A DNA stretch of 63,777 nt, filler included, from Octopus bimaculoides (taxonomy: Eukaryota): NCBI RefSeq assembly GCF_001194135.2. It is 5 parts of 5 records of this genome, joined end to end, with 100 filler letters (N's around TTAATTAATTAA, not from the genome) between each part and the next. Parts side by side here need not be neighbours in the genome. Positions count along the whole stretch, not along the records: positions 54,205 to 57,329 come from NC_068987.1; 4 more parts are not named here. One strand, written 5' to 3'. A program made the translations under genes and the position numbers. A model generated the notes under the pieces. The model saw nothing but the letters and a program-made list of their open reading frames with translations, had not been told where the DNA came from and did not search any database. Positions 54,205 through 57,329 of the stretch are shown here, in pieces; the stretch's first letter is position 1; each line of letters starts with the position of its first letter.

Positions 54205-55072
54205 CTCTCTCTCTCTCTCGCTCCTCTCTCTCTCTCTTGCTCCTCTCTCTCTCTCTCTCTCACTCTTCTGTCGCTCTCTCGTCCTTCTCTCTCTCTCTCT
54301 CGTCCTTCTCTCTCTCTCGCTCGTCCTTCTCTCGCTCCTCTCTCTCTCTCTATCTCTCAGTCTCGATCCTCTCTCTCTGGCCACTTTCTCCCCCTCTCTC
54401 TCTCTATCTCTTTCTCTCTCTCGCTCTATCTCTGTCTGTCTGTCTCTCTCTCTAATTCGCTCTCTCTATCTATTTCTCTCTCGCTCTATCTCCGTCTCTC
54501 TCTCTCACTCCCTCTCTCTCTCTCTCTGACTCTCTCTCTGTCACTCTCTCTCTTTCTGTCTCTCTCTCTCTCTAGAGAGAGAGAGAAAGAGAGAGAGAGA
54601 GAAAGAGGGAGAGAGAGAGTGAGAGACAGAGAGAGAGAGAGAGAGAGTGACAGAGAGAGATAGAGACAGAGAGAGAGACAGAGACAGACAGACAGAGATA
54701 GAGCGGAAGAGATAGAGCGAGAGAGAGAGAAAGAGGAAGAGAAAGAGAGAGAGTGAGAGAGTGAGAAAGAGAGAGACGCAGAGAAAGAGAGGAACGAGAA
54801 AGAGAGAGGAGTGAGAGAGAGAGAAGCGAGAGAGAGAGAGGAGCGAGAAAGAGAGAGAAGCAAGAGAGAGAGGAGCGAGAGAGAGAGAAGAGCAAGAGAG
54901 AGAGAAGAGCAAGAGAGAGAGAGAGAGGAGCGAGAGAGAGAAAGAAAACCAAGAGAGAGAGAGCGGAACGAGAGAGAGAGGAGTGAGAGAGAAGCGAGAG
55001 AGAGAGAGAGAGGAGCGAGAGAGAGGCGAGAGCTCTCACACCTCTCTCTCTAGCTCTTCTCTCTCTCGCTCC
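54205..55072. repeat. Degenerate (CT)n followed by (GA)n, forming an imperfect foldback
   Basis: Strand flip at tctcTAgaga (about 54573); specific variants are mirrored, e.g. cgctctatctctgtctgtctgtctc versus gagacagacagacagagatagagcg. Confidence 0.85.
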
Positions 55073-55074
55073 TA

Positions 55075-57146
55075 GTACGTTAGGACGGACGTACGTTCAT
55101 AGTTCGTTAGGACGGATGTACGTGCAGGCGAATAGGGACGCACGTGCGTACGTTCATAGTTCGTTAGGACGGACGTAAGTACAGGCGAAAAGGGACGGAC
55201 ACGCGAACGTTCATAGTTCGTTAGGACGGACGTAAGTACAGGCAAATAGTGACGAACGTGCGTCCGTTCATAGTTCGTTAGGATGGACGTACGTGCAGGC
55301 GAATACCGACGGACGCACGAACGTTCATAGTTCGTTAGGACGAACGTAAGTACAGACGAAAAGAGACGGACGCGTGTACGTTCATAGTTCGTTAGGACGG
55401 ATGTACGTGCAGACGAATAGGGACGGACGTACGTGCAGACGAATAGGGACGGACGCACGTACATTCATAATTCGTTAGGACGGACGTACGTACGTACAGG
55501 CGAATAGCGACGGACTCGCGTACGTTCATAGTTCGTTCTGACGGACGTAAGTGCAGGCGAATAGGGACGGACGTGAGTACGTTCATAGATCGTTTGGACG
55601 GACGTAAGTGCAGGCGAATAGGGACGGACGGGCGCACATTCATAGTTCGTTAGGACAGACGTACGTGCAGGCGAATAGGGACGGACGCGCGTACGTTCAT
55701 AGTTCGTTAGGACGGACGGACGTGCAGGCGAATAGGGACGGACGCGCGTACATTCATAGTTCGTTATGACGGGCGTACGTGAAGGCGAATAGGGACGCAC
55801 GTGAGTACGTTCATAGATCGTTAGGACGGACGTAAGTGCAGGCGAATAGGGATGGACTCACGTACGTTCATAGTTCGTTAGCACGGACATACGTGCAGGC
55901 GAATAGGGACGGACGCTTACGTTCATAGTTCATTAGGACAGACGTACGCGCAGGCGAATAGGGACGGACGCACGTACGTTCATAGTTCGTTAGGACGGAC
56001 GTACATACAGGCAAATAGGGCCGGATGCGTGCACGTTCATAGTTCGTTAGGACGGACGTAAGTGCAGGCGAATAGGGACGGACGCGCGTACATTCATAGT
56101 TCGTTAGAACGGACGTACGTGCAGGCGAATAGGAACGGACGTGAGTACGTTCATAGATCGTTAGCACGGACATACGTGCAGGCGAATATGGACGGACGCT
56201 TACGTTCATAGTTCATTAGGACAGATGTACGCGCAGGCGAATAGGGACGGACGCACGTACGTTCATAGCAGGCGAATAGGGACGGATGCGCGTACGTTCA
56301 TAGTTCGTTAGGACGGACGTATGTGCAGGCGAATAGGGACGGACGCACGTAGGTTCACAGTTCGTTAGGACGGACGTATGTGCAGGCGAATAGGGACGGA
56401 CGCACGTACGTTCAAAGTTTGTTAGAACAGACGTACGTGCAGGCAAATGGGGACGGGCGCACTTACGTTCATAGTTCGTTAGGACGGGCGTACGTGCAGC
56501 TAATAGAGACGGACGCACGTACGTTCATAGTTCGTTAGGACAGACGTACGTGCAGGCGAATAGGGACGGACGCGAGTACGTTCATAGTTCGTTAGGACGG
56601 ACGTACGTGCAGGCGAATAGGGACGGACGCACGTACGTTCATAGTTCGTTAGAACGGACGTACGTGCAGGCAAATAGGGACGGACGCACGTACGTGCATA
56701 GTTCGTTAGGACGGACGTACGAGCAGGCGAATAGGGACGGACGCACGTAGGTTCACAATTCGTTAGAACGGACGTACGTGCAGGCAAATAGGGACGGACG
56801 TACGTACGTTCATAGTCCGTTAGGACGGACGTACGAACAGGCGAATAGGGACGGACGGACGTGCAGGCGAATAGGGACGGACGCGAGTACGTTCATAGTT
56901 CGTTAGGACGGACGTACGTGCAGGCGAATAGGGACGGACGCACGTACGTTCTTAGTTTGTTAGGACGGACGTACGTGCAGTTAATAGAGACGGACGCGCG
57001 TACGTTCATAGTTCGTTAGGACGGACGTAGGTGCAGGCGAATAGAGACCGACGCGCGTACGTTCATAATTCGTTAGGACGGACGTACGTAACTACGTGCA
57101 GGCGATAGGGACGGACGCACGTACGTTCATAGTTCGTTAGGACGGA
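55075..57146. repeat. CpG-rich 57-bp tandem satellite, about 36 copies
   Basis: Consensus cgtacgttcatagttcgttaggacggacgtacgtgcaggcgaatagggacggacgcg; minus-strand translation repeats every 19 aa (RPYSPARTSVLTNYERTRV). Confidence 0.96.
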
Positions 57147-57329
57147 GCTCCGTAGCTCTCCGGCAGAGCGGGCGTACGTTGAGACAAGAGCAACGGACGA
57201 AGCTCCGTAGCTCTCTGGCAGAGCGGGCGTACGCTGAGACAAGAGCAACGGACGAAGCTCCGTAGCTCTCCGGCAGAGCGGGCGTACGTTGAGACAAGAG
57301 CAACGGACGAAACTCCGTAGCTCTCCGGC
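57147..57329. repeat. 55-bp tandem repeat, 3.3 copies, cut by the join
   Basis: gctccgtagctctccggcagagcgggcgtacgttgagacaagagcaacggacgaa starting at 57147, 57202, 57257 and 57312. Confidence 0.95.

What the first reader, a model, noticed from the sequence alone, without database searches (positions are those of the whole stretch)
55075..57146. Extremely CpG-rich 57-bp satellite in an AT-rich, microsatellite genome
About 36 tandem units of cgtacgttcatagttcgttaggacggacgtacgtgcaggcgaatagggacggacgcg, with roughly ten CpGs per unit. This is unlike anything else in the window. The unit is itself a degenerate dimer: both halves start CGTACGTnCA and end TAGG(G)ACGGA. Indels are mostly 4-bp (gtac/gacg) slips. 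I do not recognise it as a described family. It could be a centromeric or subtelomeric satellite, a methylation-protected or methylation-targeted domain, or non-host DNA (inference).
Basis: partly seen in the sequence, partly recalled or inferred. Interest (0 to 1): 0.72.

Follow-up and report, generated by a model that had tools for sequence, protein, structure and literature searches.

The report
CpG-rich 57-bp tandem repeat array
This is a real but ordinary kind of non-coding tandem repeat (about 36 copies of a 57-base unit unusually rich in CG pairs), sitting between a long CT/AG simple-repeat palindrome and a second, related 55-base repeat; nothing like it was found in any collection I could search, and its place in the genome and any function remain unknown.

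Summary
From 55075 to 57146 there are 34 full and 2 partial copies of a 57-bp unit. The consensus has 9-10 CpG per unit and the copies average about 7.9; CpG o/e is 2.07 and GC 53.6%. The unit is a true degenerate dimer (26 + 31 nt).

Two corrections. The large length variants are 26- and 35-bp half-unit duplications, not 4-bp slips. The array is also not isolated. It is a complete, bounded 2.07-kb array inside a compound repeat block: a (CT)n/(AG)n palindrome, then the 57-bp array, then a partly homologous 55-bp array joined in register.

It is non-coding and has no Rfam or tRNA match. No relative turned up in prokaryotic genomes, metagenomes, viral contigs, plasmids, phages, the protein collections or paper full texts. 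That argues against contaminant DNA, but no eukaryotic genome or repeat library was searchable, so novelty is unproven.

CpG sites do not mutate significantly faster than other G/C sites. I infer little germline methylation.

Best reading: an unmethylated minisatellite-class array that changes by unequal exchange and slippage. Subtelomeric, rDNA-spacer and pericentromeric contexts remain open. Low interest.

The parts
54205..54573 (.). Imperfect (CT)n microsatellite. It is the left arm of a CT/AG palindrome and runs off the left edge of the piece.
   Evidence: TRF reports period 2, 186 copies, 69% matches. GC skew is -0.76.
54574..55025 (.). Imperfect (AG)n microsatellite, the right arm of the palindrome. 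The symmetry centre lies at 54573/54574.
   Evidence: TRF reports period 2, 232 copies. The left arm aligns to the reverse complement of the right arm at 81% identity over 363 columns, and both share specific variants such as CGCTCTATCTCTGTCTGTCTGTCTCT. The score is 137, against 106 +/- 6.5 for 10-nt block shuffles (0/200) and 120 +/- 6.7 for 20-nt block shuffles (3/200). The central 200 nt fold to -71 kcal/mol as ssDNA.
55026..55074 (.). Junction: a short CT-rich tract that makes a second small inversion against the end of the (AG)n tract.
   Evidence: Read directly from the sequence. TRF finds a short CT row at 55042-55071. Only sub-threshold miRNA-hairpin hits fall here.
55075..57146 (+). 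The 57-bp CpG-rich tandem array: 34 full and 2 partial units, complete within the piece and bounded on both sides.
   Evidence: Supported. Divergence from the consensus is 7.8% and mean identity between units is about 0.87 at all lags, so there is no higher-order repeat. CpG o/e is 2.07.
55395..55460 (+). Recent 26-bp half-unit duplication inside the array (the 83-bp unit). A second, older one lies at about 56827-56883.
   Evidence: TRF reports period 26, 2.5 copies, 95% matches, and a second row at 56827-56883 with period 26 and 80% matches. The unit alignment shows both.
56233..56303 (+). 35-bp duplication inside the array (the 92-bp unit).
   Evidence: TRF reports period 35, 2.0 copies, 94% matches. 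Seen in the unit alignment.
55810..56262 (+). Multi-unit block duplication: about 170 nt starting at 55810 recur 283 nt downstream. Both copies carry the same rare variants (55-bp units ending GCTT, TTCATTAGGACAG).
   Evidence: The ungapped diagonal scan gives 93% identity at lag 283. Units 55864/55919 match units 56147/56202.
57147..57329 (+). A second tandem array with a 55-bp unit (GGACGAAGCTCCGTAGCTCTCCGGCAGAGCGGGCGTACGTTGAGACAAGAGCAAC). It has at least 3.5 copies at 95% identity, runs off the right edge of the piece, and is partly homologous to the 57-bp unit.
   Evidence: TRF row 57140-57329. GC is 62.6% and CpG o/e 1.25. About 35 nt align to half A of the 57-bp unit, and 4 of 300 shuffles reach that score. 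The junction is in register at the shared GGACG(G/A)A.

Best explanation
This is a real, non-coding, eukaryote-type compound tandem-repeat block.

Origin (inferred). A 26-27-nt proto-unit, CGTACGTnCA...TAGG(G)ACGGA, built from tetranucleotide-like GGAC/GTAC/ACGT motifs, duplicated into a 57-bp dimer. That dimer then amplified to a bounded 2.07-kb, minisatellite-class array.

Turnover (shown by its footprints). The array changes by replication slippage and unequal exchange in three registers: whole units, half units (the 26- and 35-bp duplications) and multi-unit blocks (the 283-nt lag duplication). Variants cluster locally; for example, all seven GTAAGT units lie in the left half. The neighbouring 55-bp array shares about 35 nt with the 57-bp unit and is joined at a shared GGACG motif. 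I read it as a diverged sister of the same ancestral repeat.

CpG richness (inferred). The founding unit was CpG-rich, and the CpGs have survived because this DNA is little or not methylated in the germ line. CpG sites change no faster than other G/C sites, although the copies have diverged about 13% from each other.

Function (inferred). I think it most likely has no sequence-specific cellular function. Its effects would be structural: a CpG-island-like, G-skewed block rich in short dyad symmetries.

Genomic position: not determinable from this piece.
For: - Tandem structure, boundaries and consensus.
- Dimer: 1 of 2000 shuffles reaches the score of the two halves.
- Half-unit and block duplications.
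- No higher-order repeat: identity is flat at 0.86-0.88 for lags 1-15.
- Homology of the 55-bp and 57-bp units: 4 of 300 shuffles.
- Not coding. Unit-length variants are not multiples of 3. The longest open stretch within the array is 130 codons. No Pfam family reaches its cut-off. Protein searches return only other translated repeats.
- No RNA family or tRNA in the array.
- Mutation spectrum. CpG-site transitions are 8.6% against 5.5% at non-CpG G/C sites (odds ratio 1.6, p = 0.06). Leaving out the single 16:16 G/A polymorphism they are 6.5% against 5.5% (p = 0.52). G/C to A/T transitions exceed A/T transitions (1.5%) about 3.9-fold by odds ratio (p = 1e-4). In heavily CpG-methylated genomes the CpG transition rate is roughly ten times higher than at other sites (established knowledge).
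- No match in prokaryotic, metagenomic, viral, plasmid or phage DNA.
Against: - The organism and the flanking unique sequence are unknown, so 'no function' and 'eukaryotic' are inferences from the anatomy alone.
- Counting variants across copies counts cells, not independent mutation events.
- Homogenisation or GC-biased gene conversion could restore CpGs and hide methylation-driven decay.
- The 10 CpG per unit, the conserved TAGG(G)ACGGAC blocks and the constant positive GC skew would also fit a protein-binding or promoter-like repeat.
- The genome-wide copy number is unknown. This could be an outlying copy of a large satellite family.
Confidence: 0.6

Rival explanations
1. A subtelomeric CpG-island repeat module. 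Several different short tandem arrays lie side by side near a chromosome end and act as a promoter or boundary, like the human 61-29-37-bp repeats that drive TERRA transcription.
For: The architecture matches. Two adjacent, distinct arrays have short units (57 = 26+31 bp, and 55 bp). The composition is CpG-island-like (GC 53.6-62.6%, o/e 1.25-2.07). GC skew is a steady positive +0.2 to +0.3. Each unit carries one TTAGG (27 copies in the array). The human analogue is described in PMC6600276.
Against: There is no tandem telomere repeat anywhere in the piece: TTAGGG 0, CCTAA 0, and TTAGG occurs only once per unit inside GTTAGGAC. There are no transcription data. The resemblance is architectural only.
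Confidence: 0.12
2. Sub-repeats of a ribosomal DNA intergenic spacer. Such spacers typically hold several blocks of different CpG-rich tandem sub-repeats (enhancer, spacer-promoter or terminator repeats) together with simple-sequence tracts.
For: The piece shows several adjacent arrays of different short units plus long CT/AG tracts, with high CpG content. That this is typical of spacers rests on established knowledge of rDNA spacers (for example the Xenopus 60/81-bp repeats), not on a test made here.
Against: Rfam finds no rRNA in the piece, but the piece holds no unique sequence at all, so this says little. No paper in the library pairs 57-bp sub-repeats with an intergenic spacer.
Confidence: 0.12
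3. A (peri)centromeric satellite: this locus is an edge or outlier copy of a much larger array that binds centromere proteins.
For: Each unit holds a 10-bp inverted repeat, ACGTACGTGC...18 nt...GCACGTACGT. Three units fold better than shuffles as ssDNA (z = -3.25, 0 of 200 shuffles). Dyad symmetry is a feature of many satellites (PMC8122249). Three units make 171 bp, roughly the length of DNA per nucleosome.
Against: The array is complete in 2.07 kb and bounded by other repeats. Units are only about 87% alike, with no higher-order repeat and no rise in identity at lag 3. The stem shows no compensatory changes: only 1 of 7 A31 units carries T52. The inverted repeat follows trivially from two copies of the self-complementary CGTACG core.
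Confidence: 0.1
4. Internal tandem repeats carried by a transposable element (for example a Helitron-like or MITE-borne array) and dispersed with it.
For: The array is short and bounded, its units are moderately diverged, and a related second array lies beside it. This pattern is known from element-borne satellites in invertebrates (established knowledge).
Against: No element termini, target-site duplication or coding remnant can be seen. Both flanks are simple or tandem repeats.
Confidence: 0.06
5. Non-host DNA: a contaminant, symbiont, plasmid, phage or virus.
Against: Exact 24- and 20-mers are absent from prokaryotic genomes, JGI metagenomes and IMG/VR. The only hit is one isolated chance 20-mer inside an ordinary coding region with no tandem repeat. 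blastn finds nothing in plasmids or phages. Microsatellites hundreds of bases long do not fit prokaryotes. Viruses of eukaryotes are poorly covered by these collections.
Confidence: 0.03
6. A protein-coding 19-residue repeat (57 = 3 x 19).
For: Two of the six frames of the consensus are open.
Against: In the real sequence every frame is broken. The longest ORF in the array is 130 aa, and length variants of +26, +35, +4, +7, -1 and -2 shift the frame. Substitutions show no codon-position pattern that I could see. There is no Pfam family, and there are no homologues among 1.84 billion representatives beyond other translated repeats.
Confidence: 0.01

Closest known systems
Minisatellite / short-unit satellite DNA in general (tandem arrays that evolve by unequal crossing-over and slippage)
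   Same: Head-to-tail copies, non-coding, unit built by merging shorter motifs, local clustering of variants, block duplications, and dyad symmetries (review PMC8122249).
   Different: Genome-wide abundance and chromosomal location are unknown. CpG density is unusually high: 9-10 per 57 nt in the consensus, reached by 0.2% of shuffles of the unit.
Human subtelomeric 61-29-37-bp repeats (CpG-island TERRA promoters)
   Same: Adjacent blocks of different short tandem units that together form a CpG island (PMC6600276).
   Different: No sequence similarity was tested or expected. No telomere repeats lie in the piece. The human repeats are heavily methylated in the telomerase-positive cancer cell lines studied (PMC6600276), whereas this array shows no CpG decay. 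Promoter activity is untested.
rDNA intergenic-spacer sub-repeats (for example the Xenopus 60/81-bp enhancer repeats; from established knowledge)
   Same: Several blocks of distinct CpG-rich sub-repeats with units of tens of bases, alongside simple-sequence tracts.
   Different: No rRNA gene or recognisable promoter or terminator lies in the 3.1 kb available. The context cannot be tested.
SSUsat, the G+C-rich intercalary satellite of the bivalve Spisula subtruncata
   Same: An invertebrate satellite that had no database match when described. Its units are mostly unmethylated at the tested CpG sites and show no higher-order repeat (PMC5537241).
   Different: SSUsat has a 315-bp unit, 44% G+C, very low diversity (Pi 0.029) and makes up at least 1.3% of the genome. 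This array has a 57-bp unit, 53.6% G+C and about 13% divergence between units, and its abundance is unknown.

Membership tests
Tandem-repeat (minisatellite/satellite) DNA | Head-to-tail copies of one unit, far beyond chance | tested here: met
   TRF scores of 421-1205 at period 57; 35 anchors spaced mostly 57 nt apart.
Tandem-repeat (minisatellite/satellite) DNA | Non-coding | tested here: met
   All frames are broken, there are no domains and no homologues.
Satellite DNA in the strict sense | High genomic abundance or long arrays | not testable with these tools
   This array is only 2.07 kb and bounded. No reads or source genome are available.
Centromeric satellite | Long homogenised arrays, often with higher-order repeats | tested here: not met
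   Unit identity is 0.86-0.88 at every lag with no periodic rise. The array ends on both sides within the piece. This applies to this locus only.
Centromeric satellite | Association with CENP-A and the cytological centromere | not testable with these tools
   Needs ChIP/CUT&Tag or FISH.
Subtelomeric repeat module (TERRA-promoter type) | Adjacent arrays of different short units forming a CpG island | tested here: met
   The 57-bp and 55-bp arrays have GC 53.6% and 62.6% and CpG o/e 2.07 and 1.25.
Subtelomeric repeat module (TERRA-promoter type) | Lies next to the terminal telomere repeat | tested here: inconclusive
   No tandem TTAGG or TTAGGG in the piece, but only 183 nt lie beyond the 57-bp array on the right.
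rDNA intergenic spacer sub-repeats | Located between the 28S and 18S genes | tested here: inconclusive
   No rRNA match, but the piece contains nothing except repeats.
CpG island (Gardiner-Garden and Frommer criteria: >200 bp, GC >50%, o/e >0.6) | Composition thresholds | tested here: met
   2072 bp, GC 53.6%, o/e 2.07. Hypomethylation itself was not measured; it is only inferred from the lack of CpG decay.
Prokaryotic, phage, plasmid or viral DNA | Sequence match to a sequenced replicon | tested here: not met
   No true hits.
CRISPR array | Conserved repeats alternating with unique spacers | tested here: not met
   The whole 57-nt period is repeated, with no unique spacers.

The most novel reading that the evidence does not exclude
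The block is a functional, unmethylated CpG-island made of tandem repeats in an invertebrate-type genome. It would act as a repeat-built promoter, enhancer or boundary, analogous to TERRA promoters or rDNA spacer enhancers. The invariant TAGG(G)ACGGAC blocks would be factor-binding sites, the ACGT-core dyads would help position them, and the constant G-rich skew would favour R-loops when the array is transcribed left to right.
Probability: 0.1. Interest if true: 0.5.

Novelty: new member of a known kind. Interest (0 to 1): 0.2.

Why it matters
The importance is modest.

- If the source genome is known to the operators, the unit would make a ready FISH or read-depth probe. It would show which chromosomal compartment (subtelomere, rDNA spacer, pericentromere) holds this compound repeat block.
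- Its intact CpGs give a cheap sequence-only hint that intergenic repeats in that genome escape germline methylation.
- The array also illustrates how a short CpG-rich proto-unit grows into a dimeric unit and then into sister arrays.
- It does not open a long-standing question, and arrays of this kind are common in eukaryotic genomes.

Tried and rejected
1. Finding the source or relatives by DNA. I scanned metagenome, prokaryote-genome and viral contigs with exact 24-mer and 20-mer patterns and two degenerate patterns. The only result was one chance 20-mer inside an ordinary coding stretch (L001, which has no tandem repeat). blastn against plasmids and phages found nothing.

2. Finding relatives by protein.
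- A concatenate of the open consensus frames of both satellites gave no hit at E <= 0.001.
- An exhaustive HMMER search with a 130-codon open frame gave 13 weak hits. Those I inspected are other translated tandem repeats or repetitive proteins with a similar period, not homologues.
- Exact look-up of 20 window ORFs, with either V/L or M as the first residue, found none in the collection. The source contig therefore could not be fetched.

3. Literature. Twelve sequence k-mers searched in full text gave only one chance primer match. Searches for '57-bp satellite', '57 bp + intergenic spacer + subrepeats' and cephalopod terms turned up nothing relevant.

4. RNA genes. The only Rfam matches are sub-threshold miRNA-type hairpins at the two CT/AG inversion points. 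I reject them as artefacts of the inverted microsatellites. No tRNA was found.

5. Higher-order repeat or 171-bp periodicity: rejected.

6. A conserved hairpin supported by covariation: rejected. The paired variable positions 31 and 52 co-vary in only 1 of 7 units.

7. A gradient of divergence towards the array edges: none that is clear.

Full report
**1. What is there**

The piece (54205-57329) consists entirely of repeats. From left to right it holds:
- an imperfect (CT)n tract, 54205-54573, cut by the left edge of the piece;
- an imperfect (AG)n tract, 54574-55025;
- a short CT-rich junction, 55026-55074;
- the 57-bp array, 55075-57146;
- a different 55-bp array from 57147 to the right edge (at least 3.5 copies, 95% identical).

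Anchoring on ACGTTCATAGTTCGTTAGG gives 35 true anchors. (A 36th at 55066 is a fuzzy-match artefact in the CT junction.) That makes 34 full units plus an 18-nt and a 24-nt partial unit, or 36.4 unit-equivalents.

**2. Composition**

- The array has GC 53.6%, 288 CpG in 2072 nt and CpG o/e 2.07. TpG is depleted (o/e 0.38), and CC and CT are almost absent.
- 69% of all C on the + strand sit in CpG.
- The consensus has 10 CpG in the GCGCGT variant and 9 in the GCACGT variant. Real units carry 5-10, with a mean near 7.9.
- Because the array is one 57-mer copied many times, the fair chance test is on the unit itself. Only 0.2% of shuffles of the unit reach 9 or more CpG. This is unusual but not extraordinary, given how many satellite families exist.
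- GC skew is steadily positive, +0.2 to +0.3, across the whole array.

**3. Internal anatomy**

The unit is a true degenerate dimer. GGACGGACGTACGTGCAGGCGAATAG (26 nt) aligns with GGACGGACGCACGTACGTTCATAGTTCGTTA (31 nt), and 1 of 2000 shuffles reaches the observed score.

The length variants respect this substructure:
- two 83-bp units carry an extra 26-nt half; the one at 55395-55460 is 95% identical, so it is recent;
- one 92-bp unit carries a 35-nt duplication at 56233-56303;
- the others are one +4, one +7, two -1 and two -2.

There is no higher-order repeat. Mean unit identity is 0.86-0.88 for all lags from 1 to 15. Multi-unit blocks have nevertheless been copied. About 170 nt at 55810 recur 283 nt downstream at 93% identity and share rare variants. 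Variants also cluster: all seven GTAAGT units lie in the left half. These are the usual footprints of slippage and unequal exchange.

**4. The neighbouring repeats**

The 55-bp unit shares a segment of about 35 nt with half A of the 57-bp unit (CGGGCGTACGTTGAGAC-AAGAGCAACGGACGAAG against CGGACGTACGTGCAGGCGAATAGGGACGGACGCAC). Four of 300 shuffles reach that score. The two arrays are joined in register at the shared GGACG(G/A)A. I read them as sister arrays from one ancestral repeat.

The CT and AG tracts are mirror images in more than composition. The left arm aligns to the reverse complement of the right arm at 81% identity over 363 columns, with shared specific interruptions. This beats 10-nt block shuffles (0 of 200) and, marginally, 20-nt block shuffles (3 of 200). 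It is therefore an old inverted duplication, or less likely an assembly fold-back.

**5. What it is not**

- *Not coding.* 57 = 3 x 19, and two consensus frames are open. In the real sequence, however, the longest ORF in the array is 130 aa, and the length variants break the frame. No Pfam family reaches its cut-off. A six-frame consensus query found nothing. An exhaustive search of 1.84 billion representatives returned 13 weak matches; those I inspected are other translated tandem repeats or repetitive proteins.
- *Not an RNA gene.* Rfam gives only sub-threshold miRNA-hairpin matches at the two CT/AG inversion points and nothing in the array. There is no tRNA.
- *Not recognisably non-host.* Exact 20-24-mers and degenerate patterns are absent from prokaryotic genomes, JGI metagenomes and IMG/VR, apart from one chance 20-mer in a coding stretch without repeats. 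blastn found nothing in plasmids or phages.
- *Not a CRISPR array.* There are no spacers.

**6. Methylation inference**

I compared substitutions against the consensus, by class of site.

| Site class | Transitions | Comparison |
|---|---|---|
| CpG sites, all | 8.6% | against non-CpG G/C: odds ratio 1.6, p = 0.06 |
| CpG sites, leaving out the single 16:16 G/A polymorphism at position 53 | 6.5% | against non-CpG G/C: p = 0.52 |
| Non-CpG G/C sites | 5.5% | against A/T: odds ratio about 3.9, p = 1e-4 |
| A/T sites | 1.5% | - |

The copies differ from each other by about 13%, so there has been time for decay. In a heavily CpG-methylated germ line, CpG transitions run roughly ten times faster than others (established knowledge). 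That signature is absent here. I infer that the array is little or not methylated in the germ line.

There are caveats. The counts are cells, not independent events, and homogenisation or GC-biased conversion could mask decay.

**7. Structure**

Each unit holds ACGTACGTGC, 18 nt, then GCACGTACGT. Three units fold better than shuffles as ssDNA (z = -3.25). The stem shows no compensatory change. The dyad follows automatically from two copies of the self-complementary CGTACG core. I give it little weight.

**8. Interpretation**

The shown facts fit an ordinary eukaryotic minisatellite-class array within a compound repeat block. It was built by duplication of a short CpG-rich proto-unit, is maintained by unequal exchange, and is probably unmethylated.

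Three contexts typically show such side-by-side CpG-rich short-unit arrays, and all stay open:
- subtelomeres (human 61-29-37-bp TERRA promoter repeats, PMC6600276);
- rDNA intergenic spacers (established knowledge);
- pericentromeric edges.

The piece contains no telomere repeat, no rRNA and no unique flank, so none of these can be tested. A homogenised centromere core is disfavoured for this locus.

**9. Novelty and limits**

No match was found anywhere I could look. That includes paper full texts and literature searches. However, no eukaryotic genome collection, nt, Dfam or Repbase was available. The source contig could not be recovered through exact protein look-ups either. 'Undescribed family' is therefore unproven.

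I rate it a new member of a known kind, of low interest.

Noticed in passing
window 54205-55025 (centre 54573/54574): About 370 nt of imperfect (CT)n are followed directly by about 450 nt of imperfect (AG)n. Together they form a long diverged palindrome: the arms are 81% identical and share specific interruptions such as CGCTCTATCTCTGTCTGTCTGTCTCT. It could be a real inverted duplication, prone to hairpin or triplex formation, or an assembly fold-back.
   Followed up: partly
window 54497-54655 and 54941-55107: Dozens of sub-threshold Rfam miRNA-precursor matches (best 50 bits against a gathering score of 90) pile up on both strands at the two CT/AG inversion points. They are artefacts of the simple-repeat hairpins, not miRNA genes.
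   Followed up: yes
window 57147-57329: A second CpG-rich tandem array has a 55-bp unit, 95% identity between copies and GC 62.6%. It runs off the edge of the piece. It is more homogeneous than the 57-bp array and shares about 35 nt with it.
   Followed up: partly
window 55395-55460 and 56233-56303: Two near-exact internal duplications (26 bp at 95%, 35 bp at 94%) show recent slippage in half-unit register.
   Followed up: yes
window 55810-55980 versus 56093-56263: A block of about three units is duplicated at a lag of 283 nt (93% identity). Both copies carry the same rare 55-bp units ending GCTT.
   Followed up: yes
window 55075-57146, unit position 53: A balanced G/A polymorphism (16:16) separates GCGCGT from GCACGT units. 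The A form completes a perfect 10-bp inverted repeat with ACGTACGTGC. The two forms are intermingled along the array.
   Followed up: partly
L001 1160-1179 (Ga0170475_132729393): This is the only exact 20-mer match in the metagenome collection. It lies in a non-repetitive stretch that reads like ordinary coding sequence. It is a chance match and unrelated.
   Followed up: yes
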